A DNA stretch of 64,000 nt from Pocillopora damicornis. Taxonomy: Eukaryota. Under the pieces are notes generated by a model that saw only the letters and a program-made list of their open reading frames with translations, was not told where the DNA came from and did not search any database. The stretch spans positions 310,001 to 374,000 of the forward strand of contig NW_020846810.1 in the NCBI RefSeq assembly GCF_003704095.1, in the 5' to 3' direction. Position numbers and translations under genes: made by a program. Position 1 is the stretch's first letter, and every line of letters begins with the position of its first letter. This document shows, piece after piece, positions 39,101 to 64,000 of this stretch.

Positions 39101-42100
39101 TTTACACTACTTCCCAATTTTGCCATTTCTTCGTTAAAGAGGCTAATCTATAAAATGTTAATCATTACAGAAATTAAATGAAAGGAAAGTATTATCATGT
39201 CACGTAAGAGTTATAAAATTATCATAAAGGAAAGTCAGGGTATTTTTAAAGACAGTCAGTCGGTAAATACAACAACGGGAAAAAAAAAACTAATTTAATT
39301 ATATTTGGAGGTAAAAACATTTTTGCTTTCCTTCCATTGCGGTCTCGGGGCATATCCGAGAGCTAAATACCCACGATATTCTCTCAACGATAGCGGTCAA
39401 ATTACAAAGATAATTGAAGTTTCCAGCCATAGTAATCAAGACATTACTGTTTCATGGATAGTCTCTGACACAGATGCTTCCATTGTTTTTTCTTTTGCAA
39501 CTGGAGCAACCTAAGAAAAAGTAAGGATTACATCAAATTAGAGGTAAATTGAATCACACTTTGCATATAGTATTACGTAGAACCGACCAGTCAATTGGAA
39601 CTTGTTTGCAAAATGTTTATAACAAATTGAAAACAATTCATTCAATCATTTCGAACTTACAAAAGCCACCAACTAACGTGTGACGTGTGAGTCTCCAATC
39701 AAAATTCTCATAACAGCGCTTATTATAGCAGTATGAAGTTCCTTTGTGACAAAAAGTGTAGGACGGACTCCAACACATTTGCTGTATATGGAGGACCTAG
39801 CTGACAGATGAGATATCTGTAACTCAGACAATCCATATGAAAATCTGGAACTGACCAGAGTTGGGATTCTAACACAAACAGAGATCTCTTCCAAACAATA
39901 AAATTGAGAAAAATAAATTACCTTTTTGGTGCGTTCCTGTTTTGCACTTTCTCTGGCATTTGATTGCCCAAGTAATTTTAAGCTCTGTGAAGGAGAATTT
40001 GCAGTAAAACTTAAGCTTCTCTCAATCCTCTGCTCCTGTCTTGAAGTAAAAGGACTGGGCTGATCTTCCTTTGTTACATGCCCAGCTGGTTGTTTAGCAG
40101 ATGTTAGCTTCGGTGTTGATGGCAAGCTTAGTCCTGCAACCTGAGAGGGAACAGAGCAGATTGTCTTTTGTTCTAAACCTTAATTATATATTTCAGTGTG
40201 ACTTCCTTTATCAAAGGAATCAACAGTGTACATACGCAGTATTGAAAGTTCGATGTGGCCCAATCTCTTGACAGATTTATAATACAATTCTTTTTGGCTT
40301 CCTAAAAAATAATTTGAACAAATATTGAGTTATCGCAAATTCTGATCATCGTTTTAAAAATCAGCATAGCAAGGCTAAATCCTGTAAGAAGCACCATTCA
40401 TTTCAGCTCTTTGTGCCATTGCCCTAAAAAAATTTTTGGTGATCTCCCAAGCTAAGAAACCTCTGAAAATATTGTGGTTGCATTTATGAATCAAGCAAGG
40501 TATGGAAAAAAATTAAGGAACTAATTTTTCAATGATTAAGTAGTTTTTACTCAATTGAAATTGACATAACACTGCGCTAAGGGGCCTCGTAACGGCACAA
40601 GGCTGTAAGTTAATGAGTTTTATTGATGCCAATCTTCTACTGTAAAGTTAAATTGTGTAATACCTGAGGTTGAGAGGGTGCCTTTATGGAGGTTGCAGCA
40701 GTAGTTGGTGCTGGTTGAAAAGATGTCTTTACTTGACTATCTGGCTGCAATTGAGTGATAGGAGTGGGTTTCACAAGAGGAGGCCTACTCCTTGAGGGCA
40801 TCCCTGATTCTGTGGCTTGCACTTGTGCAGTAGGTTTAAAGGGTATTGGCCCTGACTGCTTATCACTTGAAAATGAAAATGCACCGGCTGAAGGGTTCCC
40901 AGATGTACCTGAGGAAGAAGTTCCAGCTGTCGAAGGAACAGTTAGCGTTGAGCCTGGTAATGAAAAGGTACCAGACTGAAGATTCCCTGAAGTTCCAGAT
41001 ATCAAAGGAGTGGTTTCTTTAGGGCTTGCAAATGAAAAGGTATCAGTTGGAAGGTTCCCTGATTTGCTTGACAAGGGAGTTCTAGATGTCAAAGGAGTGG
41101 TTTCTTCAGGGCCTGCAAATGAAAAGGTACCACTTGGAAGGTCGACTGATTTGCCTGACAATGGTGTTCCAGGTGCCAAAGGAGTGATTTGCTTGGAGCT
41201 TGCAAATGAAGAGGTACCACTTGGAAGGTTCCCTGATTTGCCTGACAAGGGAGTTCCAGATGCCAAAGGAGTGGTTTGCTTGGAGCTTGCAAATAAAGAG
41301 GTACCAGTTGGAAGGTTCCCTGATTTGCCTGACAAGGAAGTTCCAGATGTCAAAGAAGTGCTTTCTTTGGGGCCTGCAAATGAAAAGGTACCACTTGGAA
41401 AGTTCCCTGATTTGCCTGACAAGGGAGTTCCAGATGCCAAAGTAGTGGTTTGCTTAGAGCTTGCAAATGAAGAGGTACCAGCTGGAGAGAAATAGCCAGA
41501 TGTTGTGGTCTGTGAGAAAACACCAGTAGGGAGGTCTCTAGCAGCACCAAAGGTTGGCAAAACATTCCCTTTAGGAACAGAACCTGATAATAAGAAAAGA
41601 ATAATATCCCCGGAGTGGTAAATGACAAAGGCCCTTGATTGAATCAGTCATTAATGTTGGAACTTGTAAAAATAACATTGGAAATGAAGTCTCCTGTTTA
41701 TTTACAATGTTCAAAAGATTACTGAGTTGAAAGTACATTCACAGAAAAAAAAAGAAAGGTTTGGGTTGCAAAATCTACACATTTTTAAAATGCTTTATAG
41801 GAAGGAATTCCGAAGTACAATTCATCACCTGCTTTTGATGCTATGGCCTTTCTTTGTCCTCCGAGTGGTAAAGGTTCTGGAACTCTAATTATACCTTGAT
41901 CTACATTAGGGGTTTGATTAACAACATAATATGGGCACAGGACACCATCTGTTGATAGAAGCATCATGATTGGGGCTGGGGGAAGCTTTTTTTCTCCTTC
42001 TAAAATGGGCTTGGTTGATCTTAAATCAAATGCCAATCCCATAGGAAATGTTTCATCATTGTTGTTAGTCAAAGGCATTTCTGCACGACCATTTTCTTCA

Positions 42101-48100: not shown

Positions 48101-50068
48101 GAACTTCCAAGGGTTGGAACATCATAGAGATTCAAGAGAGTTTGATTTCCATTCACATAGCAGACAGACAGAGTCAAATCATCACTGCTAAGACCCACAA
48201 ACTGTACAGAATGACCAATTTCTTTGAAGGTTGAAGGGCAAGTTGCCACTGAAAGATACAATAAAAAAAATACCCTATCACTGTTAGACAAATGGATCCC
48301 TGCAGGATGACATCATAACAACACTCAAGCATGTCAAAAATTCCCCTAATGTGCAAGTTTGGTAACTTCCTGTTTTTTTTTTCTCATCAGCTTATAGCCC
48401 TCTGTATAAAAATTATTAAGATTCAAGATTCAAGATTCAAGTTTAATTTAAAAGATCATTCAAAGTATCCCTGTTGATTCAAAGCTGCATCAATTTTGCA
48501 ATGATATACGGCTGTAACTTAGCTCTGAATGTACTAATTTTTGAGAAAAGAACTGGACAACTATTGAGGTACTGATGCACCAAAGAATTAAGCCACCATT
48601 GAAGGAAGTAGGTTTCCCCAAAATACAACATAGTGACCCCTTGAGTTTTATCTTAAACAGGCTAAGGGTAACACATACGCAGTTTTGTTTGTTTTTTTTT
48701 GAGAGGGTGGGTAGGGTGGTGGTTCTAAGGGTTATTTCAACAACTTACCAACATTCTGCATGCTTCCTTCATCAGATTCATTAATTCTTTCAATGGTTTC
48801 AGTTTTTATCACTCTTGTTCCTGTTACAATAAATATTGATACAATGTCCCGTATGATATATAATCTTGAGTTTAAAATTGAAATAATGTAGAGCACAATA
48901 GTAATCAGAAAGAAATTAAAAAATAAAGTTGATATAATTGTTTTAATTCAATTCTCTCCTTGGTACACAAACAAGTAAAGGCGCACTTTTTGTCTTGATC
49001 TTGATAAATACATTACTCTTATAACCAAAAGCAAAGAGGAGAGAAAATTGAGTTCCGAAAGAAAAAAAGTAATATTAAGATCTTCAGGCAACAAGTCAAA
49101 ACTCCTCCACCCTCCCTATTGTGAGGAGAAATTCTGTCTTGGTCACTCGTGGGTGATAAGGAGTTGCTAGGCTCATTTTGTTTAAAACTCAATAAGTACA
49201 CATTCCAAGAAAGAAACAACACATAATTTAAAGATGTTCATCCTCTAAGATGCACAATAGTTTTAAAATACCTGTAGGGCAGCCAACAAATGTCAACCCA
49301 TACTTGGTGGAAACAGCCAGCGAGCTTGAGCGAGCAGTGGGTAAAGTTGTTGGTGACTCAAACATTCTTATTTTCCTCATTTGTTTGAAGCTAAAATCCT
49401 ATTTAAGACAAGAATTTAGGTACACGTGTTAAATAAAGTTGATAGCATGTTCATAGAAGCCTCAACTGTCACACACTAATAAATCATATCGTTTGGAGAG
49501 TCTAATTGCCATGAATCTCAGTTCCATCCCAAAAAACAGGTTGACACGGAATACTCAAGCAGCAAGAGTTCACTGACTACAACCACTCACAAAATCTCCC
49601 CATGGTTCACCGAGAATTACAGCTAAACAGATCATTTTTATAACGCCTGAAAAGATGAACCTGTACTTCACTAAAAGTGAGAGACAGCTAAATTACGATT
49701 GGTGTTTATATTATTACTATTGCGCTTCGACATACGATTTAATGTTTAGAATAAAAAAGTAAAAGTTGGGAGTAAATCACTATTAATTAAGATTCATGTA
49801 GAGCTTAATTTGTCAGCCTGGCTTTTACAGTACATTTTTTCAGCTCACATTTTGTAGCACTGTTAATTTTAGGTATTGTGTCAGTTTAAACTTTAGGAGT
49901 TAAATTTAGGTAACTTGCACTTTCAAGAAGTAAAAGAAAGTTTTCAATGCCACCTATGTTTTACTTTCAAACTACAGCTAAATTTTGCACAAGGAGGTTG
50001 TACGGTCGTAAAACAGATACCTTAACATCCCTCTCTGGAGGCGCTTCTTCATCTTCACTATCTGCCAT
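27178..50068 (-). CDS. NUP214: nuclear pore complex protein Nup214 (CAN), 34 exons, ~2195 aa
   Basis: N-terminus MADSEDEEAPPERDVKDFSFKQMRKIRMF...LAVSTKYGLTF. Beta-propeller motifs LSSDDLTLSV, WNP, CWSPKGKQLVVG, RAEMP and PPAPIMMLLSTDGVLCPY; central coiled coil (RALDP); S/T-rich FG-repeat C-terminus ending SFSQWR*. Phase-consistent GT-AG exons: 50068-50021, 49398-49272, 48820-48749, 48248-48100, 47949-47901, 46125-45976, 45881-45811, 44863-44803, 44421-44324, 43583-43486, 42662-42596, 42129-41829, 41583-40664, 40140-39922, 39510-39448, 39147-38989, 38399-38329, 38022-37974, 37494-37415, 36550-36497, 36187-36115, 36018-35924, 35521-35445, 34834-34751, 34220-33676, 33544-32654, 32227-31066, 30601-30491, 30243-30200, 29930-29774, 29291-29078, 28531-28496, 27818-27663, 27214-27178. 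Confidence 0.96.
27877..28197. mobile_element. non-autonomous DNA-transposon-like repeat with TTCCAGGAC internal repeats
   Basis: Begins cagggttcgtac and ends gtgcgagctcag (decayed inverted end), with many ttccaggac/ttcaggac units. Lies in a NUP214 intron. Confidence 0.6.
29116..29237 (-). repeat. 18-bp coding tandem repeat, (F/L)GG(A/T)PA x ~7, in NUP214
   Basis: cgcaggagcaccwccwaa units on the + strand. Confidence 0.85.
34885..35160. mobile_element. interspersed MITE-like repeat, same family as 36712-36972
   Basis: Shared blocks gattgcat, tctcgaccaatcagat, cgcgttttcccgc, ctctgatt and gacac..aatcga. Confidence 0.6.
36712..36972. mobile_element. interspersed MITE-like repeat
   Basis: ttttcaaatgattgtcg ... 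cgacacttaatcgagaa decayed inverted ends; homologous to 34885-35160. Confidence 0.6.
36975..37305. mobile_element. Tc1/mariner-type MITE
   Basis: ta|tagtcaaacctctatcaggcgg ... ccgcttaatacaggtttgactg TIRs of the CAGT-type terminus, with TA on the left flank. A related end fragment lies at ~55948-55990. Confidence 0.75.
40860..41485 (-). repeat. 87-bp (29-aa) coding tandem repeat in NUP214 exon 13
   Basis: Anchor aat(g/a)aa.aggta recurs at 41031, 41118, 41205, 41292, 41379 and 41466 (period 87), plus degenerate units at ~40959 and ~40872. Unit is approximately SGTPLSGKSGNLPSGTFSFAGPKETTPLT. Confidence 0.92.
43172..43445 (-). mobile_element. interspersed repeat containing a tRNA-derived SINE head
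   Basis: On the - strand: A-box TAGTCCAGTGG (43291-43301), B-box GGTTCTAGTCC (43248-43258), then gcgttgtgtccttgagaca, a typical post-tRNA SINE segment. No intact cloverleaf. Confidence 0.65.
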
Positions 50069-50485
50069 TTTGTGAGTTCTCAGCTTATACTTATTTTTTT
50101 TTTCTGAGTTTTACTTTTCTTTCCTAAATTATCAAAAGTTCAACACTTGCGTCCGCAGATTTTTACTTCCGCAGATAACTGCCATAGGCAGCCATTTTGT
50201 TTTAGTGGTGTCGCTCCAGGCTTTGGCTGGTTGCGGTTGAAAAAGACTAGGATCTAGGAGATATCAATGATACAATATCGTTATCATTGGTTAATGATAT
50301 TCCCCTAAAACGAAGAAATAATAGAAAGCCCTCTTTCTCGTGAATCGCACGTGAGAATCTCGGAAACGTAATGTTACCTTTTTTTCTTTTGGTGGACGAC
50401 ACCGAGGACAAAGAAATACTACTTTCATTCAAGTGACTTTCATTTGATTTAGAGACGTGTTATTTTCAATTCTCCTTAGAATCAG
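50069..50485. promoter_or_regulatory. bidirectional promoter region and probable non-coding first exon, NUP214 (-) / NOV-like (+)
   Basis: The start codons diverge 820 bp apart. The region is locally CpG-retaining, with YY1-like GCCATTTTG at ~50191 and ACTTCCG at ~50165. Donor CAG|GTACGC at 50485/6 and acceptor tttcag at ~50829 precede the ATG at 50888. Confidence 0.6.
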
Positions 50486-50887
50486 GTACGCCATTAATTT
50501 TGCACTGATTTCTTGATTTTTGCGTGGCGCCTCGCCGAGGCAGTGGATATTTATAGTTATTTCCTACGACTATTTATTGAGAGATAAAACTCATGCATGT
50601 ACATGTAGCTGAAGAGCATGTTGTCAGTTATGAACACAGAGGTAGTGTAGAACTGGGAATGAACTCATTTAATTAAATTTAAGATGAAAGATTTAAGGTT
50701 GCATAGTTTTTAGGCAGAACTATAGTGTAATACACTGTTAATACATGTTTAATGTACTGCTTTGAAAATTCGATCATTGGTAGTAAAATTATTTCAAGAA
50801 ATTCTTTCATTTTCTTCCTTAAGCTTTCAGTCTGGGAATACCAGTACCTACCGCAGAAGTAAAAACAAGGATGACTGACTAAATACA

Positions 50888-53800
50888 ATGATGGAATTCG
50901 AAGAACAAAAGAAAAAGGCAGAGGCAAGTGGAGGCCCTTCTTTGCTTGTTGGTTATGACAAGCTGTTGTACATGTCTGAGTTGCAAGCTGTGCCTGGTGA
51001 TGATGAGTATGGAAATCAAGACCTCGATGCCAAATTTACCAAAATTACTCATCTTAATCCTGAACACATAACAAGACTGAAGAGAGAGGTCATTGAAATA
51101 TTAAGTTCATGTGAGGGAAACTGCTTAAAGCTCTCCCAGTTTAAAAGCAGGTACCGCAAGTGGTTTGGAAAAAAATTCAATGAATGTTATAGGTTGTCAG
51201 GTGGAAGAAAGGAATTCTGCAATCTCATGGCTGAGTTAGATATCATTGAACTTGACCAAAATGGTTCAATACCTCTCATAAAACTTAAAGAACAACATGT
51301 GAGTCAGCATATGAGTTTTAATATAGCTGGATCTGAGCATAGTTGTGCTACTGATGTGGAGACAAGAGAGACCAGGAGACCAAAGTTTGTGAAAAGAAGA
51401 GAGACTGTGGCACCAACGTTCCAGAGCCAAAACACCAGCCTTGATGCCATTGATCTCTCTGAAAAGTTAATAAGATTGAAGAAAGACATTGTGGATATGT
51501 TGAGGTCCTGTGAGAGGAACTGCTTGTATCTCTCCCAGCTTCAGGAAGAGTATGGGAAAACATTTCAAAAAGGGTTTTTTACCACCCACAAAGTGCTGTT
51601 GAAAGGAAAATGTCTCTCACAATTCTTAAGAGAGTTAGACATCCTTGAAATAGAAGATAAAGGTGAAAAAGGTGCCAGGAACTATTTGATGAAGCTGAAA
51701 GAACCACATGCAAGCCAGTTTATGCTGAACATGGGTTTTGACAATGAAGAAAATCCCAGTTCATTGAAGAAAAAAGATCCTGAGAGTGTAGAGAATACGA
51801 AAGGGCTCATGTCCCAAAACATTGGAATTGATTGTGGTTATTTCCCTGAGAAGTTGACAATGTTGAAGAAAGATATTGTAAATTTACTAAAGTCTTGTGA
51901 GGGAAATTGCTTGTATCTCTCAGAACTTCCTGATAAGTATTGGCAAACATTCAGAAGAAAATTCCATGGTACCTTCAGAGTACTGTTCCAAGGAAAAGGT
52001 CTGGTGCAATTCTTATCAGAATTAGATATCATCAAATTAGAACATACCAGTGAAAAAGGTGTGAAGAAATATCAATTAAAGCTGAAAGAACTGCATGCAA
52101 ACCTGTCCATGCAGAGAACAAGTTTGAACACAGCAGAAGAACTTGATTCCTGTTCTAATTTTGGGTATCAGCAGGATGAATTTGATTCCAAAGAACCAAC
52201 CAAATCACTAAGACCAGCCTCTCTAGCAGGTGATTTGGCAGTTGCTGCTGGCCCAATTATTTCCAGAGTACCTACTGTCCCGCCAGCTCCTTTGGATCAA
52301 AATGTTTTGGATTCAAGAGTTCAATCTCCAGCCCCTGCAACTACCTTCCAGGCTTCTCCTCCTTTGGTTTTGTCAACATCTTTAATACAAGGTCCTAGTC
52401 ATGCAGTCAATATACCTGAAGGTATGTGAAAGATATGGAATTTATATTATGAGGAAACAGGGTACATTTCTTAGAATTTCTGACAATATTGATTACGATA
52501 GGTAACTGAGGTTTCTGAGAATAGCAGAAGGTGTGGTCATTTGAAAATAATGAGGGATCTGTATATTAACATTTACTAAGTGGGAGAGAGTGTCTTTTTG
52601 GGAACTAAAACACTCCTATAATCAAAACAACCACAACATCTGGAGACCAAGTGGCATATTTTTCATACATAACACGAGTGGTTATATTGAGTAGGAATGT
52701 CACCATTCCTGCTTTTTCAAACTTTATTGAATGAACTTGGTTTGCTTCTTGTTTGGAATAATGGCTACAAAATTTTTTTTGGAGAGTAACAAAGATGTAA
52801 ATGGATTTTCTGAACAACAAGAGAGCAGAAACACCAAAAAGAAAATGCTGTATGATCTCAAGATTTTCAAATAATTTCTTGAAAGTTGCAACAAAACAAG
52901 AGAAATAGATTGGAAAGGTTAATTTTTTTTTCTATGTGTGCTAAACAACATTCAAAGGTTCAAAGTGAAAAGAGGCTGAAAATGAATGGTATCTGATGAT
53001 TCAAGTCAGAGTCAGTAAATAAAATTTTTTTCAACTGCAGAAAAGTTATAAAAACAGTTCACACGTATTTTGGCCTAACTGATGGTGTTATACATGTATG
53101 TTAACCTTTTTTACAATTTGGGCATTGGCAGGGTATTTTGTCCCTATTCAAACCCGGTATTTGTGTTAAAGCCAGATAATTCATCTCTATCATTGTCCTT
53201 AAAATAAAAGGAAAATACATGTTAGTTCTTGTGACATGAAGAATATCTCATGAATGAGGTAATTGAATGAGTGGGATATTGCTCTTGGAATCTGAACATA
53301 AATCCACCATGTAAAATCATCAATTTCTAGCATATTGGTCAAAATTACTATAATTACTATTGTTCTTTCAACTTGAACATGAAAGTCATATATCTTCTCG
53401 CCAGTGTGTAATATCCTTTAACTATTACATAGAGGGCAAAATTACTGAATGCTGATTGGCTGAAACAGAGGGCTTTTTTTTGAAAAAAAAAAGGTCGAAA
53501 AGAACCTCACTCAGAAATATTGTATCATGCTTACCCACAACAGTTTCTGCAATCATCACCCAAATATTTTATGTAATAATCATGTAATTTATTGTAGTTG
53601 TATTCTTTCATCAAGGGTCTGGTCTAACAACAACCGCCAATACAGCTCCTGCAAAGGCTGAACCCTTCAACGCTGAGCAAGTGGATCAGGAAGTGAAAAG
53701 CAAACATATGCTACTTACCGGAAGTACTCCTCAAGCGATACCAGTCGTTCCCAGTTTAATGGAAAACAAAAGTTTTCACGCACAGTTGGATCAAAATTGT

Positions 53801-56800
53801 CCACGAATCCAAGGCATTTGTTTTGATGCCGATGAGGACTCAGAAACTTTAACAAATCTGAAGCGAGATGTTATCGAAATTTTACGTTCTTGTGAGGGAA
53901 ATTGCCTGTATCTCGACAAATTCAAGTTAACATACGAGAATCGGTTTGGGAAGAGATTCCTTAACTGCTATCCATGGTTAAAAGGAAAAAAAAAAGTCTT
54001 TCGTAATCTTATGGCAGGGTTAGATATCATTGACCTTGAACAATTAACATCGGCTACGAAAGGTCCTAAAAAGTTTATGATGAGGCTGAAAGAACCACAT
54101 GCAAGCCAGTTCATGATGAGAATGAGGTTAAAAACCTCAAGTGAAGTTGGTCCTAGCTTTTATGAAGCTGGTCATCAACTGGAAATGTTTGATTCCAAAG
54201 TTCCGTCAAAGTCGTATACACCTCTCACTGGGGGGAAAAACTCAGCAGCTGCCGTAAGTCCAGATGTTGCACGTGTCCCACTTGTCCCATCTCATTTGGA
54301 TTTCAGCGACAAATCACCATCATTGCCGCTACTAAATACCGAAGCCAGCACAGACGGAAAGGTAGACCCACTATCTGTCCCTGTTGGAATAAACCCGGAG
54401 GCTAGCCAACGAGAAGGAGAGAAACAAGGNNNNNNNNNNNNNNNNNNNNNNNNNNNNNNNNNNNNNNNNNNNNNNNNNNNNNNNNNNNNNNNNNNNNNNN
54501 NNNNNNNNNNNNNNNNNNNNNNNNNNNNNGTCCCTGTTGGAATAAACCCGGAGGCTAGCCAACGAGAAGGAGAGAAACAAGGTTTTGCTACCGGTGTTAC
54601 TAATCCGATGACTGTCCCTCTTCCCTCTTCAGGTAAGAATGTTGGAAGATTTAAAAGTGAAATTATTTTAAACTGTGTTTCCATTGAGTTCGTGAAACGT
54701 AAACAAATCAATCATTACTGCCATTACTACTCAAAGTAAATGCATGAAACTGGCTTTAGGCGTGGGAAAATGCACTTGGTAAGGGTGTAATACAAAGGTG
54801 AGGTAAAGGTGTGATCTTGCATTTAAGTGACCATAGCGTTTGTTGAACCAAAGTCAGAGCGTAGTGAGCAAAGCTGTTGTACTCCCGAATTACTTTGAAA
54901 CTTTAACATTTGAACTTTTATGTACTATAGCTCAAGAAGTCGTCAAAAGTCGCACAGTTGCCTGACGAAAGGTTCATCTCAGACTGATGTAACCTCGTTC
55001 CATTAATTTTGCTTTTATTTTTTCAGAGGGGGCGAGTTTCTAAAGAAACTGTGATGCTGCGTGTGTGGGAGAGTATAACAGGGTAATTTAGTGTTATCAA
55101 CTGAGTTGAAAACGTTAATTAGCCGCTGTAAAGAGTTTAAAGACTAATGTTTAGAGCGTTGGCCCTTCGTCTATCGCTCTGACGAAGGGCTAACGCTCGA
55201 AAAGTCAGGCTTTAAACTCTTTTTCGGTGGCCAACTTACGTTTTCAACTCAGTTGATAACACTTAAGTACCCTTGTATTTTTTCAAGAAACCTTCAACAG
55301 TAACCAATATTTACAAGCTAGTAACACCATATGATTAAGAAAATTGGCAAGTGCTTTTAGCTGATGCAAAAGATATTTTGCTTATTTCTTCCTAAGGCAA
55401 AGAACCTGAACTGAAAATACCAACAGATGTAAAGGTTAAACCAGAACTACTTCCTTCTGAAAAAACACGAATTCGAGAAGTTGGTACGCCGGATCCTTTT
55501 GAGAATTCAATCTGTAAGGCCCATCACGTGATGAATACCATAACGGGCGGCGCAAAATCAGCTGTAAGGAATGCTTCTTCACATGAAGTTAACAAGGCCG
55601 CGGAAGAGATCATCACCTCTTTGTCGGAGGAAGGTCGCTTTGTTGGCCTCGAAGAAGTAAAAGCCAGGCTCTGTAAAGATTTTGGAAAATCAAGTCTTAT
55701 TAAAATGGGGTTCAAAACAGACAAGGATATCCCCGCTCTGAAGAACTTGATTGAAATGCAGGCCAAAGTGAGTTCATGTAGATCTGATTACCAAGTTTGT
55801 AAAACGAAGTGCGATAATTGCGGAGCAGTGAAAAAATCAAGGGGAGGTTTGGGTCGAGACTTATGAAAAATGGGTTGTGTCCGAGAAAAAATAAGTTTGA
55901 CCGGTCAACTTGACAAGTGCCAACCGCGATATTATTTCGAGCCTTGTGTATTAAGCCGTGGGTGGCCGCTTTATATAGGTTTGACTGTATTTTTTAATTA
56001 ATTTTTTCCTCTCCTCTTTTGTTTTTATTATATCAGATAATAGGTAAATGTTGAGCAACTCTGTACAAACGTTACCAACAAATCATCATCTTTGTTATTA
56101 TTATTATTCATCTATTCCATGGTTTTCGTGCGTTCTACAGGTTAACTTATTCGTCCATGCTTACGTCACATTCAACAGTATAGCAACCTTGTACGAATTA
56201 AACCAAAGCCTTGCCGCCTTGGGTTCCAAATCAGACTTCGAAGAGCTCCGACTGGGCCCTCTAATAAAACAACCCGTGGTGTATAACATGTTTAAAGCAC
56301 CCCAGAGTCTTACCGCTGTACCTCAAGTGACGACAGTTCAAATTATCAAGCACTTGAACAAGTACATGTCAAAGATGAAAGGAACGCTATATTTAGAGAA
56401 ATTCCTGGAGTATCTTTGTGAGCAGTATCATTGTTACACTCCTTACGAGCTGGGAGTCAGAATACAAAGCCTTGGACTGGCTGTTGCGGTAATGTTATTT
56501 CAAAGAGCACATTTCGAAACTATGAACACATGAATGCAGTATACTGTAGTGAGTGAGTGACTGAAATGTTGGTTCTCATCTTTACGTATGGTTGATTTTT
56601 CTTTGTTTAATTCGTTAGATGCTTAAAAAAGTGAAACATTCCAAGACCAAGAGGTGGGGAGCTATCAGAGAAGAAATGTCGATCGAGATGGAGGAAGAAA
56701 TTCAAAGATGCTTGCGTAAATTCAAGAGAGACCTTCTCGGGCAAGAACTTGGTGATTTAAGGAGCTGTGTTATGAAATTTTTTGACAAATCTCCGACGGA

Positions 56801-57662
56801 TGTACTGAAGGCAGTATTCGAGTGTTGCTTGGAAATGTTTGACGAAAATTGTCAGGGAAAGGTAACGACCTTTCTGACCATGCTTACCAAGCACAAACTT
56901 GGGAGGCAATTGTTTCAGCTGGCGCTGTGTGCTAGTTGTAAGCCCTTACTGGGAGAGGCTATGGAAGAACTGGTTAACATTAAGATCAACACAGAAGTTG
57001 CCAACCGTAAAGCAAATCACGAGAAAACGAGGACAAGGCCTGTCCCACCCAGTGAAGGTTAATTAATTAATTTTTTCTCCATTTCATTTCTTTTTTTTGT
57101 TTTGTTTATTTTGTTTCGCTGTTAATGACGATTATCATTTAATATTAATATCATTGCGTTATTATTGGGATCATTATGCTGTTTCATAGTATAATTATGA
57201 TGGGAGACAAACTTTGTTCGTTTGCTTCACGATAGATTCACTTTTGATGCTAATCGCGATGTTTCGACTGCAATACTGCTAGTCTTCATCAGGCGATAAG
57301 GTCGATTGTTTACGTGTCGCAATTTGTAGCACGTTGGTACGCTGCTATTGGTGCATTTCAATCCTCATTATTATTCCGGTTGTTAGATGGTGTTCCCTCA
57401 TAGGTCCTTATAAGTCGGTTGTATGGTTTGATCGTCGGTTTCCAAGCTTCGGGAGGTTCGATTTTGCTATTCCTGTTGATTTTGAAAAACGAAGTTATCT
57501 TTGTTGATGTAATGACCTTCAATGAACTATAGTAGCAAAGGGTTTCATATCTGGAAATTTTGCTCTTCAGATTCATCGCTTACAATCCATGTCAATCGCT
57601 TAAATTTTGTTCTTCCATCCCTTGTGGTTAACTAACCACGGGAGACTTCCTTCGCTTAAAAA

Positions 57663-57702
<40 letters not shown>

Positions 57703-60700
57703 TTATGAGAGGAAAAAAGGACGCAACTACATTTTCAAATAATTTCTTTCGTTTTTTGCTCGTTTTTGTTTGTACGTATCTGTGAAATAGGCGCCGTTGT
57801 CTGTGAAGTGCAGGAGTGGATTAAGTGTGCCGAACGTGTTGACCTAACGACGCTGGCAAGAATTGAGGCGAATGTCGTGAACAAATTCCCAGGATTTACC
57901 GGCTTTGAAGAATTTGGTTATGGCTCTTTTCTGAAGTTTTTAACAAAACACAAGAAACTAAAGAAAGCCACAGAAGAGGTTGGCGGAATGGCCCAGTCTA
58001 GAAGAGAAGGAGCAAGGATTGGTTGTCAAGTGCCGCTTAATAGTGTCTTGGATTTTATATATCAATGTGGGACTCAAACCTCTACCGTAAGTTTTGCTTC
58101 CTAATGATACTAATAAGGTGCATGAATGAGGTGCTACGCATAAAACGTCTGCTTTCAGTGTGGGTGCACCACAGTCACAATTCCTTTCCAGAGTATTTAA
58201 CTCAGAAAAAATAAGTAGTCTTAGGTAGTCCCGGTATGATCAGTCATTCTTTCCCAACGGATAAATTTACCTTCTACGTAAAGGAAACCAAAGAATGGTA
58301 GTTCAGTAAGATAGATTTAAAAACGTGACAAAGAGACGAGCAAGAGCCACGGATGGCTAGATGGCCGAGGATGAAGCAGATTACCAGTTTGCAATAATCA
58401 CAATGTAACCTTAAAATGCTCAGGATCCGATACCAAAGCGAAAACTCGCTGGGGTCGCTACAAAACGTAATTCTTTACGTGGGCCTATACTGTTTTATTG
58501 CGAATAATCCAGTCAAAAGTTGTTGTTACTTTTTATTTGTAGGAGTGTATTGAACGTGAATTGTGCGGTTACTACAATGTTAACAAAGTGACGGATCTCG
58601 GATTTGGTTCTTTTTCGTGCCTACTGAAAAAAGCTGCGGAGCCAAGAGTGAAAACTCTAACGACAGTTTACGAAGTCGCTCTCCTGTGTCACGGCGCTGG
58701 CGCTTTCCACGAAGATAGCGCCAGCTTTAGTACTCGCAGTGCTCTAGGCTATAAGAGCAAACAGGAAGCTTTAGATGCCATACAAAGCACTCCGCTCCTC
58801 GAGGATGTTTCCCTCTGGACTCACTGGGATGATGTATTCGGCGGCGAAGTGTCTAAACTTGGCGACTTGAAGTCATTTTTGGAAAATGAAGGAATTTTAT
58901 GTAGTGCTGAAAAGTCATTGTCAGAGGGCCACAATTCCTTAGTCGTCATGGAAACTAATCCTGGTGTACTCCTTAGAGTAACTACCCACACGTCCACAGA
59001 AATATTCAGGAAATGTTTATTGTGTGGGGATGTGATTGGAGCAGCTGGCCATTTGGTTTCCATAGTTATAGTGAATGGTGGTGTGGCTAACACTCCTGTC
59101 GCTCTTTTAGCCAATTACGTGTATTCCTCTTTGGCATCGATGGGTACTGACGATGAGGGGGACTGTGATCAACGTCCAACCTTTGTTCTTGAATGTCTGA
59201 ATCGTATGCCTCTCAGATTGGCTCAGGCAATTGGGAAAAAGGTTTGTAGCTCACTGGCCAAAGGCCTGAAACAATGACACCTTCTCCCCTTTCTGCCCTG
59301 CCCCTCCTTCCCTTCTTTTCCTGGGCATATCAAAGTTATTCGAGTCGGTAGCAAAATCGGATTTTGTAAGCCTTTCTTTTAAAGAGGAGAGGGGTCTTAG
59401 TGGTAGGGAAACGGAGCGAAACAATAGCTTTAACGGTCCAGAAACCCATTCTTGAAAGCCTCGGTAGTTACCTGTCCCGAAAATTTATTTATGTTCTTTT
59501 GTTGCTCGTTCGTTAAGTTTATCCTGTTTTTTGTGTGCTGTGTTTCAATTCGAGACCAAGACAGGAATAGTTTATGAATTAAAGTATTAGACAAGACCTT
59601 CATTACTATTTCTTAGATTTAGTTTTTTGAAATATGGTTTTGGGCCCTATAGTTACCGGAACTTTTAAGTAACACGCCTCCGGAAACGATGCGGAGACAT
59701 GTTTTTATACTTCAAGTAAAGCTGCAGCTCCTAACGCTATTTAAAACTCCTTTGTGAATCTTGATAAGCTCGTTCTAAGCACGTACGCGTATTACTTTGG
59801 CAATTGATTGATACTATATACGCATTTCATGCTTGTACTTGCATTTCTCAGGTTTTTCTTGAGCCTTTCAAAAAGTTGGTTGGTTCAACAAGAGCGGCGT
59901 CGCTGCTGCTTTCAAGCTGTTCAACTCAGTCGCAACGTAACCGTCTTCACCAGCTGGGATTTGCCTTTAGCATAAGTCAGTGGATAGAGGACTTCCAGGA
60001 AAGAGTTTCTCATGACAAAGGGGACAGCGAGGGTGTCCTCTTTAATGAGCACTACAATGACGAAAGCAAGAGATTGATCACAGCTGTTAGGCCCGTGGCA
60101 TCTTCTATCTCATTGGTGTCGCAACAAGCGGAAGTGTGTACAGTACCACTATGTTTTACGTTTAGATATTTATAGAAAGTTATCAAAATTGTAGCCTTAA
60201 ATGCATTTTGAGCGTTTCATTTTGTCGTAAAAGTGTGTCATGGTATACAGAGGAACTGTTTCATAGTAAAGACAATCGAAATCACCCCGCTTTCCTACTT
60301 GTTTTTTTTTTAGACCGCTGCTAACCTTAAAACAATCTTCCCACAAGCATGCAGTTTTGATGAAAAGGATGGGGACGAAGGTATTTATAACTGTCTACTT
60401 TTATTTGGTTATATTTCCTTCCTTCTTCCTTCCTAAATCTACTCCCAGCTTTTTATGCTGCCCCTCCCGTTCTCCTGTCACTTCCTTTGTTTTCATCTCC
60501 TATGTTTTCAATGTACTTTCCCCCTCTCATCTACAGTCTATAAGGTATGTTTACCACGCCTTCTAGTCATATGATTACTTTGGAAGTGGCCATCGGACTG
60601 TTATCTGATCATTATCGAATTTATTTATGAGTTACTTATAATTTTTTGGTGTAAGTTTTTCATGAAAGCGTGATCCCTGATCGTGATTATAGTCTTTTTT

Positions 60701-63700
60701 CGATAATCCCAGCAGCAACTTCAGACACTAAGGGTGGATTGTCAGCATTACCATCAGGACCATGCACACCTAACAGGGAATGCAGGGCAATAATTGAACA
60801 AATTCGCCGTGAGGATTTTGGAATCGGTTTGGAGCTTGGAAAAGAGGAAGCCAAACTTGTTCAGCGACACCGCGAGAGAGAGGGTCGTGGCTTACACCGT
60901 CTTTCCTCCGATCTTTATACCAGGGACACCCACTTTTTGTTGGAGCTCGTTCAGAATGCAGACGATAATTCCTATCCTGAAGTGTGCTGTGGCCCAGGAT
61001 TCCCGACCCTTGTATTCGTCCTCGAGCGGGACAGGATCGTGATATTGAACAACGAAGTTGGATTTGTTGAGAAGAATATACGCGCGTTGTGTGATGTTGG
61101 CAGAAGTACCAAAGGGGCGGATCGCTATGGATACATCGGTTAGTGCAGTATTTACGTATTTGTTGCATGGTAAATATCTTTCTGACTTTCCTATTTGGGC
61201 AAGAAGCCCTGAAAGAGCTTATATCCAATGGTCGCCTGCTTTGCGCTTTTCTCTCGTTGCATTTGTAGTCGAACATGTTCTCGATATGGCTTTGTTTCAG
61301 GACAAAAAGGCATCGGGTTCAAGTCTGTATTCCGAGTTAGTGATAGCCCTGAAGTTCACTCCAATGGATATCATATTCGCTTTGACGCCAAAAGTGGTCC
61401 TATTGGTCATATTCTCCCTGAGTGGATTGGAGACAATTTTTCAGTGAAACCAAATGGTGAGCATATCAAAGAAGGAACGAAAGTCATGGAAAAGATGGAT
61501 AAAGATGGTGAATTGAGCAACATTGGCGAAAGCATGAACAGGTGAATTCATGTGCTGGGAGATGAATTTGTTTGTGAATTATATGAAATTGTGAGCTTAT
61601 TTTATCTGCCAAAAAAGCTAGTATGTAGCACCACACCATAAATAGATGCGTTGGAGCTTGTTAATCGGTCGTGGCTTGTTTTCTCTCCTTATATCCTCTG
61701 CTGTTAAAGTTTATTAATATTATTTATAATTGATTTTTTACTTGAGCGTCATGCGCGTGATTCTTTTCTTTTTGGTAGCTGGCCAACCTGTATCATTCTT
61801 CCATTAAAAGATGAACATAAAGGGAACAAAAAGTCTTCACTCGCTGCCGGATTTCACGATGTTCACCCATCTTTATTGCTGTTCTTACATCGTTTGAAGG
61901 GAATCTTTATATACGACGAGGTGGGAGATGAATTTGTTTGTGAATTATATGAAATTGTGAGCTTATTTTATCTGCCAAAAAAGCTAGTAGGTAGCACCAA
62001 TTTAATAAATCTTTCTTCCTTCTCCATGGGGTAATACAGTCTGAAGTAAAGAATTGAAATACTCGGACAAAAGTGACAGTAAGGCGACAGCCGACCTCTG
62101 ACTACAAGGGAAAAGCTGTGACCAGTGCAAGAACGCCCGTGGAAGTGTTTCTGTTAAGGGTATTCGCCTCCTCTGGTCATTCCTGATTGGTTAAAGTGTC
62201 ACATGCGAGGGACGTCGTTGCTCATACTGTCAACTCTACTTCACTTTATTTTCCTTTGAGAAGATACTTTATTGAGGACACACTCGATTGATTTCCTCAG
62301 CATATTCTATTTTTTTTTTATGGGATAATTTTGAAAGCATGAGGGCCGGTTATTTAAACAAAATTTAGCCGTTGTTTAACAAAACCACGTCCTAAACTAT
62401 CCTCAATTTAGCTACATTTTTTATTTGAACAGTGATTGAAAAGTCTCAAGAGGGCGGAAAGCTAACATTGGAAGGAAATTTAGTTAATTATATCAACGAA
62501 AGCCTGAGGTCCACTGATTGCGTAAAATCGCGGTTTGGGTTAGACCTCGTTTAAATAACCGGCCCTGAAAGTTTCCGCCGTGCGACGTTCCCCTTAATGC
62601 GACAACCTTGACATAACAAACGAGTTTAATACTTTAGCCGTTCCCTCACTTATTCTTCAATCCGATCACTTCGTTCTTTGGACCAAAAACTATTTGTGGA
62701 CGATTAAGCATCTGAATTTCCCTTCTATATTACTTTTGTGAAAAGGTATGATGTTCCAGAAGCTTACGTAAGCTTGCCAATCGCATTTCTTTAGGTAAAC
62801 AAGAGTTTTGTTAAAATGCTAAGAAGAGACCTAGGAGATAATGTCATGGAGGTTCTCCACAACACAGGCACAGAGCGCTGGCTTGTAGTCAAGAAACAGC
62901 TTGAGGCTGCTAGAGTAAGAAACACGCATTTAGCATAGGGTAATTTGGTAGTATCAACTGAGTTGATAACGTAAATTAACGAGTTACACTCTTCCACCGA
63001 CGCAGAACTACAGTTTCTTTAGAAACTTACCCCCCTTTATGCATTTAGCATACCTTGTTGCTTGTCTTTGCGGGCAAGAACGGGTCAGAGGTATCATTCA
63101 TATTTATTCGAAGAGGGGATGGGGAAAATGATGGAACATTGTCTTTGTTAGAAGCCAGGTTGTTTGGGTTATTTTCCCTCCCTTCCTTAGAGTAGTGATG
63201 CCAGGAAATTCACCCACCATCAATACTTTAATTGTTTCGTGTGGAGTGTAGCTGAGGCCTAGTTCAAACGTCGATCTTTACATGTACCGAACCTAATTGC
63301 AATTTGGGTCGACTCGAATAATTAAGAGCAGCAGTTGATTCAAACGTCGATCCGAATTTAGTCGATCCTAATTGCAAAACTGAACATAACTCCATTGTAG
63401 TCAGCGGTTAATGCCTACCAATGGGTATACAGGTATATTTTGTGGATTTAAAACAAGAGGAGCACGAGCCTTCCTCCTTTCCCGCCATATTGTTTGAATG
63501 GTTCGAAGGCTTTCGCGCATGGCACGTAAGCGAACTTTCTTGAATTGTGGGTAAAACATAATTATTTTAACGTATGTATAATGTATGCATTAAGTTCGGT
63601 ACATGTAAAGTACGACGTATGAATCAATGTCGATCTTTTACCGTTCTATCCGACTAGCCGAGTCGGAGAGAACGGCACTGTCGATCCGAATACAAATCTG

Positions 63701-64000
63701 CCGATCCTAATTGATTCAAACGTCGATCTTTACATGTACTTAATAGAAACGTTAGGTTCGGTACATGTAAAGATCGACGTTTGAACTAGGCCTAATGGTT
63801 TATATTATTTTCCTTTGTTTTTGCCGTTGCTGTAATTATCGATTTCTTTGCTTCTGCAGCGTAGCTGTTGCCTCAGAGAAAATAGTGATTGTTTTTCAAT
63901 GAATTTCCATACTTTCCTGTAACAGGTGATTACCAACGCAAATCGTCTTACCTTTGTTTTTGTTTGTCGTTGTAATTTCCAGATGAAAGCAGACGTAGAG
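50888..64000 (+). CDS. NO VEIN (NOV)-like protein: 4 N-terminal LOTUS/OST-HTH-like repeats + NOV N-terminal region + sacsin/NOV-type GHKL (HSP90-like) ATPase; 3' end beyond the window
   Basis: Phase-consistent exons: 50888-52421, 53616-54632, 55397-55767, 56141-56488, 56619-57057, 57791-58086, 58543-59241, 59852-60133, 60314-60380, 60713-61138, 61301-61541, 61779-61920, 62795-62914, 63983->64000. NOV-type motifs VNLFVHAY..LYEL..FEELRLGPL and PLLEDVSLWTHWDDVF. GHKL motifs HFLLELVQNADDNSY, NNEVGF..NIRALCDVGRSTK, YIGQKGIGFKSVFRVSDSPEVHSNGYHIRFD and HPSLLLFLHRL. Confidence 0.92.
54430..54529. other. assembly gap (100 N) with 53-bp duplicated flanks; other gaps at 16554-16571 and 36259-36355
   Basis: 54377-54429 is repeated verbatim from 54530. 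Confidence 0.9.
55025..55272. mobile_element. palindromic Penelope-associated repeat with hammerhead-like core
   Basis: Arms agggtaatttagtgttatcaactgagttgaaaacgt / acgttttcaactcagttgataacacttaagtaccct; core CTGACGA-agggc-taac-gctc-GAAA at 55179-55202. A second partial copy lies at ~62937-63037. Confidence 0.7.
57658..57702. repeat. (A)n(TA)n microsatellite
   Basis: Poly-A run followed by TA dinucleotides, intronic. Confidence 0.9.
61556..61999 (+). repeat. 78-bp direct repeat (61556-61633 and 61922-61999) at the 5' ends of consecutive introns
   Basis: tgggagatgaatttgtttgtgaattatatgaaattgtgagc...gctagta(t/g)gtagcacca; one mismatch seen. Confidence 0.9.
62343..62565. mobile_element. PIF/Harbinger-type MITE
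   Basis: TIRs gggccggttatttaaac / gtttaaataaccggccc flanked by a 3-bp tga/tga duplication. Confidence 0.8.
63256..63792. mobile_element. PIF/Harbinger-type MITE, ~537 bp, perfect ~41-bp TIRs
   Basis: ggcctagttcaaacgtcgatctttacatgtaccgaacctaa ... ttaggttcggtacatgtaaagatcgacgtttgaactaggcc; flanks tga/taa; subterminal gattcaaacgtcgatc repeats. Confidence 0.9.

What the first reader, a model, noticed from the sequence alone, without database searches (positions are those of the whole stretch)
50888..64000. Four LOTUS/OST-HTH-like domains fused to a NO VEIN/sacsin-type GHKL ATPase: candidate RNA-granule-tethered ATPase (possibly nuclease)
Seen: four ~80-aa repeats (~51068-51298, 51467-51709, 51854-52096, 53849-54100), consensus LK+D(I/V)xx(I/L)LxSCEGNCLYLSxxxxxYxxxFxKxF...FLxELDIIxL...KLKEPHAS, spliced in frame to a NOV N-terminal region and a GHKL ATPase with intact motifs. 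Established: LOTUS/OST-HTH winged helices occur in Oskar, TDRD5, TDRD7 and MARF1, where they bind RNA and/or Vasa-type DEAD-box helicases in germ granules and transposon silencing. Plant NOV proteins pair a sacsin-like ATPase with a C-terminal DUF3883 domain predicted to have a restriction-endonuclease fold. Inference: this fusion could couple RNA or helicase recognition to an ATP-driven clamp and nuclease, i.e. an RNA-surveillance or anti-transposon effector. I do not know this architecture from characterised proteins. A conserved extension after the last strand (EPHASQFM) may parallel the Vasa-binding helix of extended LOTUS domains.
Basis: partly seen in the sequence, partly recalled or inferred. 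Interest (0 to 1): 0.82.

Follow-up and report, generated by a model that had tools for sequence, protein, structure and literature searches.

The report
Coral LOTUS-NOV/Tiamat ATPase-nuclease gene
This is a real, expressed, roughly 3,400-residue coral gene that joins four LOTUS domains to a NO VEIN/Tiamat-type ATPase and nuclease, but two October 2026 preprints already describe this domain combination as common in aquatic animals, so it is a further member and not a new kind.

Summary
Four homologous ~80-aa repeats lie at the stated coordinates (pairwise BLASTP E 2e-28 and 5e-33). They score as OST-HTH/LOTUS in Pfam and fold as winged helices, with solved LOTUS domains among the closest structural matches. 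They belong to a 19-exon gene that runs about 7.2 kb past the window end and finishes in a NOV_C PD-(D/E)xK nuclease domain.

RNA contigs from independent studies carry the splices 54632>55397, 55767>56141 and 56488>56619. Exons 3-19 map in order and without gaps onto a full-length mollusc NO VEIN-like protein, and 125 of 127 family-invariant residues are kept. The ATPase-to-nuclease half matches the bacterial antiphage Tiamat (TmtA) models in order.

The novelty claim fails. Two October 2026 bioRxiv preprints report N-terminal LOTUS domains in 316 of 918 eukaryotic Tiamat/NOV homologues, cnidarians included, and zebrafish has four. Here, 6 of 16 full-length relatives also carry OST-HTH.

The N gap is flanked by identical 53-nt copies read in the same frame. 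That fits in-frame continuity, but no listed RNA contig bridges the gap.

The biochemical role in animals is still untested. First readers of neighbouring windows already noted the same tandem gene array (s1-783744, s1-783800).

The parts
50888..52421 (+). Exon 1: start codon and LOTUS repeats 1-3
   Evidence: The ORF starts at the first ATG after an in-frame stop. Pfam OST-HTH 42 bits, E 8.6e-11. X1 RNA contigs cover 50822-51250 and 51325-52212. Donor AAG|GTATGT at 52421.
51068..51298 (+). LOTUS repeat 1
   Evidence: Pfam OST-HTH 22.9 bits, E 8e-5, with a faint MARF1_LOTUS match. AF2 model pLDDT 75; top Foldseek hit is 5yad, the MARF1 LOTUS domain.
51467..51709 (+). LOTUS repeat 2
   Evidence: Pfam OST-HTH 21.7 bits, E 1.9e-4. 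BLASTP E 5e-33 to repeat 3.
51854..52096 (+). LOTUS repeat 3
   Evidence: No Pfam hit of its own. Homologous to repeat 2 at E 5e-33.
53616..54632 (+). Exon 2: LOTUS repeat 4 and a low-complexity linker; contains the N gap
   Evidence: Best acceptor at 53616. An X12 contig covers 53627-54190. Donor CAG|GTAAGA at 54632 is joined to 55397 in an X1 RNA contig. The exon 1-to-2 joint itself was not seen in the listed contigs.
53849..54100 (+). LOTUS repeat 4
   Evidence: BLASTP E 2e-28 to repeat 1. AF2 core pLDDT 87-93. Foldseek 5yad TMt 0.70 and 3rco (TDRD7) TMt 0.66.
54377..54582 (.). Assembly gap (54430-54529, N) with identical 53-nt flanks (54377-54429 = 54530-54582)
   Evidence: Both copies start a codon in frames that are fixed independently, which fits overlapping contig ends. 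Not bridged by the listed RNA contigs. Not filled.
55397..55767 (+). Exon 3 (start of the NOV N-terminal region)
   Evidence: RNA joints 54632>55397 and 55767>56141, both GT..AG, within one X1 contig. 65-70% identical to the paralogues. Maps to P0009 462-506.
56141..56488 (+). Exon 4
   Evidence: RNA joints in X1 and X12 (55767>56141) and in X1, X5 and X12 (56488>56619). Maps to P0009 527-644.
56619..57057 (+). Exon 5
   Evidence: RNA-supported acceptor. 55% identical to the paralogues. Donor from the splice scan.
57791..58086 (+). Exon 6 (acceptor uncertain; 57710 is the alternative)
   Evidence: Maps to P0009 803-899.
58543..59241 (+). Exon 7: conserved block of the eukaryote-specific NOV N-terminal region
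   Evidence: phmmer finds 186 relatives. The long ones are NO VEIN-like proteins of 2,300-3,300 aa, with the match at residues ~500-1,300. 13 of 14 invariant residues kept.
59852..60133 (+). Exon 8 (donor uncertain)
60733..61138 (+). Exon 9: GHL ATPase N-box (ELVQNADDN) and the NNEVGF / CDVGRSTK motifs (acceptor uncertain)
   Evidence: PADLOC TmtA E 1.6e-23, model positions 5-107. 35 of 35 family-invariant residues kept. 83% identical to paralogue C.
61301..61541 (+). Exon 10: ATPase glycine-rich motif QKGIGFKSVF
   Evidence: PADLOC TmtA E 2.8e-14, model positions 107-154, contiguous with exon 9. 14 of 14 invariants kept.
61779..61920 (+). Exon 11 (donor uncertain)
   Evidence: PADLOC TmtA model positions 185-224. 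10 of 10 invariants kept.
62795..62914 (+). Exon 12
63926..64000 (+). Exon 13, which continues to 64063 beyond the window. Exons 14-19 follow in L009 (window coordinate = L009 coordinate + 63000): 64806-64988, 65541-66207, 66625-66827, 67367-67568, 67786-67940, 68214-71180 (stop)
   Evidence: PADLOC TmtA model positions 288-347, 528-578 and 831-1291. NOV_C Pfam E 2.1e-16 in the last exon. The E...D...ExK residues are kept in all three paralogues.

Best explanation
This is an intact, transcribed gene of a stony coral. It encodes a protein of about 3,400 residues in the eukaryotic NO VEIN (NOV)/Tiamat family, of the LOTUS-bearing subtype.

Order of parts: four LOTUS/OST-HTH winged-helix domains separated by low-complexity linkers; the eukaryote-specific NOV N-terminal region; a sacsin/Hsp90-like GHL ATPase; a helical middle region collinear with bacterial TmtA; and a C-terminal NOV_C PD-(D/E)xK nuclease.

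Shown here: the domains, their order, the splicing of the LOTUS-4 exon tail to the NOV exons, retention of the catalytic and family-invariant residues, and transcription.

Inferred from the family: bacterial Tiamat is an antiphage ATPase that cuts ssDNA and nicks dsDNA, and plant NOV knockdown weakens antiviral responses. On that basis the C-terminal half would be an ATP-dependent GHL module coupled to a DNase.

Inferred from LOTUS biology: these domains bind G-rich or G-quadruplex RNA, or DEAD-box helicases. On that basis the LOTUS array would place or license the enzyme on RNA or RNP assemblies. The most likely role is surveillance of foreign or selfish nucleic acid (about 0.35-0.4). A housekeeping or developmental role like that of plant NOV is the main alternative.
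For: Repeats and LOTUS: sequence; fold; all language-model neighbours are OST-HTH clusters.

One gene: RNA joints 54632>55397, 55767>56141 and 56488>56619, including one contig that spans exon 2 tail, exon 3 and exon 4. A canonical, phase-compatible 19-exon chain totals 10,410 nt, a multiple of 3. Exons 3-19 map contiguously and in order on abalone protein P0009, residues 462-3061, with 125 of 127 invariant residues kept.

NOV/Tiamat membership: NOV_C E 2.1e-16; collinear TmtA hits from E 1.6e-23 to 8.4e-30; relatives named 'protein NO VEIN-like' or 'wu:fj29h11'; 16 of 16 relatives carry SACS, 14 of 16 NOV_C and 6 of 16 OST-HTH.

Family biochemistry and the LOTUS fusion: bioRxiv 10.64898/2026.09.30.754977 and 10.64898/2026.09.30.755639.
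Against: No activity, localisation or binding has been measured for any animal member, so the mechanism is extrapolated from a Bacillus enzyme and from plant knockdowns.

The exon 1 to exon 2 joint was not seen in the listed RNA contigs, and the N gap inside exon 2 is not bridged. The link between LOTUS 1-4 and the NOV body therefore rests on open frames, splice signals and the duplicated gap flanks.

Two of the four repeats have no Pfam hit of their own and the other two fall just under the gathering score. The Foldseek E-values (about 1e-2) do not separate LOTUS from other winged helices.

Several splice sites (introns 5, 8, 11) are only the best of several candidates.
Confidence: 0.85

Rival explanations
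1. Same protein, different role. Like Arabidopsis NOV, it is a housekeeping or developmental regulator (nuclear or RNA-granule) whose ATPase and nuclease have been taken over for host RNA/DNA metabolism, not for defence.
For: Plant NOV is an essential, nuclear developmental factor, and the Tiamat preprint leaves open whether eukaryotic homologues are still antiviral or have been exapted. The gene is found in poly(A) RNA of unchallenged holobiont samples from several studies. Fish orthologues are reported as broadly expressed.
Against: The gene sits in a three-copy local cluster. The N-terminal LOTUS regions have diverged most (30-44% identity between paralogues), while the catalytic ends are better conserved (ATPase exon 83%, NOV_C 70-73%). 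That pattern is more usual for conflict genes. NOV knockdown impairs antiviral responses in Nicotiana.
Confidence: 0.35
2. Two genes were read as one: a LOTUS-only gene (exons 1-2) followed by a separate NOV gene that starts at exon 3.
For: The exon 1>2 joint was not seen, and the N gap lies between LOTUS 4 and the spliced tail of exon 2. LOTUS-only proteins exist in this genome.
Against: An RNA contig joins the exon 2 tail (54554-54632) to exons 3 and 4. The frame of that tail equals the LOTUS-4 frame on the duplicated 53-nt flank. No stop or polyadenylation-type end is evident within the open frame 53588-54736. Both paralogues also have a LOTUS exon upstream. The fusion is the published norm.
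Confidence: 0.05
3. A decaying duplicate (pseudogene) in a tandem array.
For: There are three copies within about 65 kb, with assembly breaks.
Against: All 19 exon frames are open, 125 of 127 family-invariant residues are kept, the catalytic motifs are intact, and the gene is transcribed and spliced.
Confidence: 0.04

Closest known systems
LOTUS-bearing eukaryotic Tiamat/NOV proteins (for example zebrafish and shark wu:fj29h11), as surveyed in bioRxiv 10.64898/2026.09.30.754977 and 10.64898/2026.09.30.755639
   Same: The domain order is the same: N-terminal LOTUS array, NOV N-terminal region, GHL ATPase, helical middle, NOV_C nuclease. The number of LOTUS domains (four) equals that reported for zebrafish. 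The shark protein P0010 has three Pfam OST-HTH stretches plus SACS and NOV_C.
   Different: The coral LOTUS repeats are divergent. An HMM built from them finds no LOTUS in the other NOV proteins, and two of the four escape Pfam. The array may therefore have expanded independently. The gene is one of three clustered paralogues carrying 4, 1 and 1 LOTUS domains.
Arabidopsis NO VEIN (NOV) and streptophyte homologues
   Same: Shared N-terminal region (exon 7 hits Chara braunii GBG70287 at E 8e-7), ATPase motifs and NOV_C.
   Different: Land-plant NOV proteins have no LOTUS domains. Their known roles are nuclear and developmental, plus antiviral signalling.
Bacterial antiphage Tiamat (TmtA)
   Same: The ATPase-to-nuclease half matches collinearly (PADLOC PDLC03972 positions 5-107, 107-154, 288-347, 528-578, 831-1291). 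Same catalytic motifs.
   Different: TmtA is 1,300-1,800 aa with a short N-terminus. The coral protein adds about 1,900 residues upstream of its TmtA-matching part (LOTUS array plus NOV N-terminal region), and none of the N-terminal exons tested (5, 7, 8) matched a TmtA model.
Sacsin
   Same: The same GHL ATPase subtype (weak Pfam SACS hits).
   Different: One ATPase module instead of three repeats. NOV_C nuclease instead of a HEPN domain. No UBL or J domain was detected.
MARF1, TDRD5/7 and Oskar LOTUS proteins
   Same: Winged-helix LOTUS fold. Tandem LOTUS arrays as in MARF1, which also pairs LOTUS with a nuclease (a NYN RNase).
   Different: The effector here is a GHL ATPase plus a PD-(D/E)xK DNase-type domain, not NYN or Tudor. 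Vasa binding is untested.

Membership tests
OST-HTH/LOTUS (PF12872) | Sequence match to the family profile above the curated cut-off | tested here: met
   Exon 1 as a whole scores 42 bits against a cut-off of 23.8, E 8.6e-11. Singly, repeats 1 and 2 score 22.9 and 21.7 bits, just under the cut-off, and repeats 3 and 4 have no hit. Repeats 3 and 4 are homologous to 2 and 1 at E 5e-33 and 2e-28. The paralogues' LOTUS domains reach E 8.8e-7.
OST-HTH/LOTUS (PF12872) | Winged helix-turn-helix fold (alpha1-beta1-alpha2-alpha3-beta2-beta3) | tested here: met
   The AF2 model of repeat 4 has core pLDDT 87-93 and that order of elements. Foldseek matches include MARF1 LOTUS 5yad (TMt 0.70), TDRD7 3rco (TMt 0.66) and Oskar 5nt7. 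E-values are only about 1e-2, and other winged helices score similarly.
Extended LOTUS (Vasa-binding subclass of Jeske et al. 2017) | Conserved C-terminal extension that forms helix alpha5 on Vasa | tested here: inconclusive
   A short helix is predicted after the last strand, but at pLDDT under 50. The EPHASQFM motif is shared by the four repeats but not by the paralogues' LOTUS domains. The extension is disordered in apo Oskar too.
NOV/Tiamat | N-terminal GHL (Bergerat-fold) ATPase with the family's invariant motifs | tested here: met
   TmtA HMM E 1.6e-23 and 2.8e-14 on exons 9 and 10. ELVQNADDN, NNEVGF, CDVGRSTK and GYIGQKGIGFKSVF are identical to columns invariant in 16 relatives, with 49 of 49 invariants kept in exons 9-10.
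NOV/Tiamat | C-terminal NOV_C (DUF3883) PD-(D/E)xK nuclease with catalytic residues | tested here: met
   Pfam PF13020 E 2.1e-16. GRWGEE...PYDIEI...YVEVKTT is kept in all three paralogues. The catalytic assignment follows the general PD-(D/E)xK pattern, not an assay.
NOV/Tiamat | Middle region collinear with Tiamat | tested here: met
   TmtA model positions 185-224, 288-347, 528-578 and 831-1291 are hit in exon order. Exons 11-19 map contiguously on P0009. [quoted passage not shown]
NOV (eukaryotic subtype) | Eukaryote-specific conserved N-terminal region | tested here: met
   Exon 7 retrieves NO VEIN-like proteins of molluscs, fishes, a chytrid and Chara at matching N-terminal positions. Exons 3-8 map on P0009 residues 462-1189. 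The N-terminal exons tested (5, 7, 8) gave no bacterial TmtA match.
NOV/Tiamat | ATP hydrolysis, DNA cleavage, antiviral effect | not testable with these tools
   Known only for B. cereus Tiamat and, indirectly, for Nicotiana NOV.
Sacsin | Three sacsin repeats plus UBL, J and HEPN domains | tested here: not met
   Only one ATPase module was found. The single-exon SACS scores (16 and 20.9 bits) are below the 32.8 cut-off. NOV_C stands where sacsin has HEPN. This is a relative of sacsin, not a sacsin.

The most novel reading that the evidence does not exclude
The coral's three clustered LOTUS-NOV paralogues (LOTUS counts 4, 1 and 1, with fast-diverging N-termini and conserved catalytic ends) form an animal innate-immune or anti-transposon nuclease system. 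In this reading the LOTUS array, expanded independently in this lineage, recognises G-rich viral or transposon RNA, or a DEAD-box helicase, and licenses the ATP-gated PD-(D/E)xK nuclease.
Probability: 0.2. Interest if true: 0.6.

Novelty: new member of a known kind. Interest (0 to 1): 0.25.

Why it matters
The family links a bacterial antiphage enzyme to plant and animal proteins, and no animal member has been studied at the bench. A well-defined cnidarian example, with a checked exon model, intact catalytic residues and evidence of transcription, is useful for testing whether LOTUS-NOV proteins are ancestral immune effectors. It does not open a new question, because the architecture, its distribution and the RNA-granule hypothesis are already in the literature.

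Tried and rejected
(1) Sequence searches of the ATPase exon and the last exon against PDB chains found nothing. A profile of the four repeats gave only E about 1 to MARF1 LOTUS.

(2) An HMM built from the six coral LOTUS copies found no LOTUS in 150 relatives, even at relaxed thresholds. It could therefore not be used to map LOTUS in the orthologues, and Pfam was used instead.

(3) The ESM Atlas search with exon 7 gave no usable hit. With exon 1 it gave only OST-HTH clusters at 0.87-0.88, which is a lead, not proof.

(4) Rfam found no RNA family in 50000-64000.

(5) The closest long relative, P0002 (2,039 aa), looks like a chimeric model (PGA_cap + SACS) and says nothing about LOTUS.

(6) RNA contigs did not show the exon 1>2 joint and did not bridge the gap. 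A hole in contigs proves nothing either way.

(7) No LOTUS-Vasa co-fold was run. I do not claim binding, and the coral Vasa RecA2 domain would have needed exon joining.

Every search and mapping was exon by exon, by reference. The N gap was not filled or looked up.

(9) Rejected readings: sacsin proper (one ATPase module, NOV_C in place of HEPN) and pseudogene (open frames, 125 of 127 invariants kept, spliced RNA).
Full report
**Setting.** The window is G000:C3445:310001-374000 of a 234-Mb, 4,393-contig eukaryotic assembly. Public RNA runs that hold the stretch are labelled coral or marine metagenome/holobiont, so the organism is a stony coral. From memory, the assembly size and contig count match the published Pocillopora damicornis assembly; I did not verify this. 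GC is 0.33-0.45 and the coding sequence is split into short exons.

**The observation.** They align with 23 invariant columns and 36-52% identity. Pairwise BLASTP gives E 2e-28 (repeat 4 vs 1) and 5e-33 (repeat 3 vs 2).

- *Sequence.* Pfam places exon 1 in OST-HTH/LOTUS at 42 bits (cut-off 23.8, E 8.6e-11). Taken singly, repeats 1 and 2 score 22.9 and 21.7 bits, and repeats 3 and 4 score nothing. The assignment for 3 and 4 therefore rests on their homology to repeats 2 and 1.
- *Fold.* AlphaFold2 models (repeat 1, pLDDT 75; repeat 4, core pLDDT 87-93) give a winged helix in the LOTUS order of elements. TDRD7 (3rco, TMt 0.66) and Oskar LOTUS structures (5a49, 5cd7, 5nt7) are also listed. E-values are only about 1e-2, and other winged-helix proteins score in the same range.
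- *Language-model neighbours.* All nearest clusters of exon 1 are OST-HTH clusters.

**The gene.** Downstream sequence was fetched from the same contig (L009; window coordinate = L009 coordinate + 63000). The last exon (window-equivalent 68214-71180) carries NOV_C, PF13020, E 2.1e-16.

I compared stop-to-stop frames with two paralogous copies further along the contig and scanned for phase-compatible GT..AG pairs. This gave a 19-exon model of 10,410 nt including the gap placeholder. That corresponds to 3,469 residues, or 3,418 if the gap and one flank copy are artefactual.

One lay of Logan RNA contigs from four runs of four studies showed these GT..AG joints:

- 54632>55397 in run X1
- 55767>56141 in runs X1 and X12
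- 56488>56619 in X1 and X5, with a one-base variant in X12

One X1 contig runs from the exon 2 tail through exon 3 into exon 4. Contigs also cover exon 1 from 50822 (66 nt upstream of the ATG) and LOTUS-4. The exon 1>2 joint was not seen.

I then mapped each exon separately onto a full-length abalone relative (P0009, 3,061 aa). Exons 3-19 land in order and without holes on residues 462-3061. They keep 125 of the 127 columns that fall within the aligned stretches, out of 128 columns invariant across 16 full-length relatives. I did not build or search a joined protein.

**The gap.** The 53 nt before the N run (54377-54429) and after it (54530-54582) are identical. The left copy is read in the LOTUS-4 frame. 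The frame of the right copy is fixed independently by the RNA-supported phase-1 splice into exon 3. Both copies begin a codon at their first base. This is what overlapping contig ends would give, and it implies in-frame continuity. No listed RNA contig bridges the place, however; one X1 contig stops exactly at 54429. Continuity is therefore inferred.

**Family.** The ATPase exons match the PADLOC models of the antiphage protein Tiamat (TmtA): E 1.6e-23 at model positions 5-107 and E 2.8e-14 at positions 107-154. Later exons hit positions 185-224, 288-347, 528-578 and 831-1291 in order.

The Bergerat-fold motifs (ELVQNADDN, NNEVGF, CDVGRSTK, GYIG|QKGIGFKSVF, LPLRSYGFRFIIQGDF) equal the columns that are invariant in the relatives. 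NOV_C keeps GRWGEE...PYDIEI...YVEVKTT in all three paralogues.

Pfam, PADLOC and the Atlas left the N-terminal exons unexplained, so I spent the one exhaustive HMMER search on exon 7. It found 186 relatives. The long ones (2,300-3,300 aa) match at residues about 500-1,300. Their source names include 'protein NO VEIN-like' (Argonauta), 'Protein NO VEIN C-terminal domain-containing protein' (scallop) and 'wu:fj29h11' (shark, gar), plus proteins of Chara braunii and a chytrid. Exons 3-8 are therefore the eukaryote-specific NOV N-terminal region.

**Novelty.** A literature search found two bioRxiv preprints dated 1 October 2026.

- *10.64898/2026.09.30.754977.* Tiamat is an ATPase and ssDNA-cleaving, dsDNA-nicking DNase. 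Arabidopsis NOV is a Tiamat homologue. [quoted passage not shown] Zebrafish has four. About half of the members predicted to sit in P-bodies carry LOTUS.
- *10.64898/2026.09.30.755639.* Animal NOV homologues with LOTUS are described, and NOV knockdown weakens antiviral responses in Nicotiana.

I checked the core claim independently. Of 16 full-length relatives, 16 carry SACS, 14 NOV_C and 6 OST-HTH. The shark protein has three OST-HTH stretches at E 2e-34, plus SACS and NOV_C.

**What is specific here.**

- The genome has exactly three NOV_C matches, all on this contig, at C3445:380803(+), 400798(-) and 425297(+). The other two genes each have one LOTUS exon.
- The 3' part of the second copy lies on the opposite strand.
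- Identity between paralogues is lowest in the LOTUS region (30-44%). It is higher in the N-terminal region (53-70%), the ATPase exon (83%) and NOV_C (70-73%).
- The coral LOTUS copies are divergent enough that an HMM built from them finds no LOTUS in other NOV proteins.

**Extended LOTUS and Vasa.** Jeske et al. 2017 define Vasa-binding eLOTUS domains by a C-terminal extension. That extension is disordered on its own and becomes helix alpha5 on Vasa. MARF1-type LOTUS domains lack it. Here the tail after the last strand is predicted helical only at pLDDT under 50. The motif is shared by the four repeats but not by the paralogues. The nearest sequence and structure matches are to MARF1. I cannot tell either way, and I lean against a Vasa-type interface.

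**Mechanism.**

- *Shown:* domain composition, domain order, intact motifs and transcription.
- *Inferred from the family:* an ATP-driven GHL module coupled to a PD-(D/E)xK DNase.
- *Inferred from LOTUS biology:* the array binds G-rich or G-quadruplex RNA, or a DEAD-box helicase, and so recruits or licenses the enzyme at RNA-rich assemblies.

I put about 0.35-0.4 on a defence or anti-transposon role, about 0.35 on a housekeeping or developmental role as in plants, and leave the rest unknown.

**Verdict.** The feature is real and was annotated correctly, but the architecture is already published. Interest is low to moderate.

Noticed in passing
window 55075-55278 (intron 2): A palindromic MITE-like element of about 205 nt, with 58-nt outer arms (83% complementary) and 42-nt inner arms. 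The genome search gave over 3,400 first-look candidates at 78-89% identity. RNA contigs of all four runs pile up here, with summed depths in the thousands and many odd internal joints, so this part of the lay says nothing about the gene.
   Followed up: partly
window 63253-63796 (intron 12): A second repeat family with terminal inverted repeats. Copies of 97-99% identity lie on at least eight other contigs, together with many shorter deleted versions. This suggests a recently active non-autonomous DNA transposon.
   Followed up: partly
window 31058-42078, minus strand: An FG-repeat nucleoporin gene lies head-to-head with the LOTUS-NOV gene. It gives a faint Pfam match to the NUP159/NUP214 beta-propeller (E 0.0025), followed by long S/T/G/F-rich ORFs.
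   Followed up: partly
C3445:383001-433000 (L010-L014): Two further LOTUS-NOV paralogues. The 3' exons of copy B (409155 down to 400720) and the LOTUS exon of copy C (395587-395240) lie on the minus strand, while the rest of each gene is on the plus strand. These regions contain 100-N gaps, so an assembly inversion is likely. Copy B's ATPase N-box exon was not found.
   Followed up: partly
window 53627-54190: The RNA contig of run X12 (labelled organism A) differs from the window at 26 of 564 positions, whereas X1 contigs are nearly identical. This points to a divergent allele or a sister species in that sample.
   Followed up: no
P0011 (5,421 aa) and P0002 (2,039 aa): P0011 matches the NOV N-terminal block in 13 separate stretches, which would be a giant protein made of repeats of that block. 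P0002 joins a bacterial-type PGA_cap domain to a NOV N-terminal region and ATPase, and is probably a chimeric gene model.
   Followed up: no
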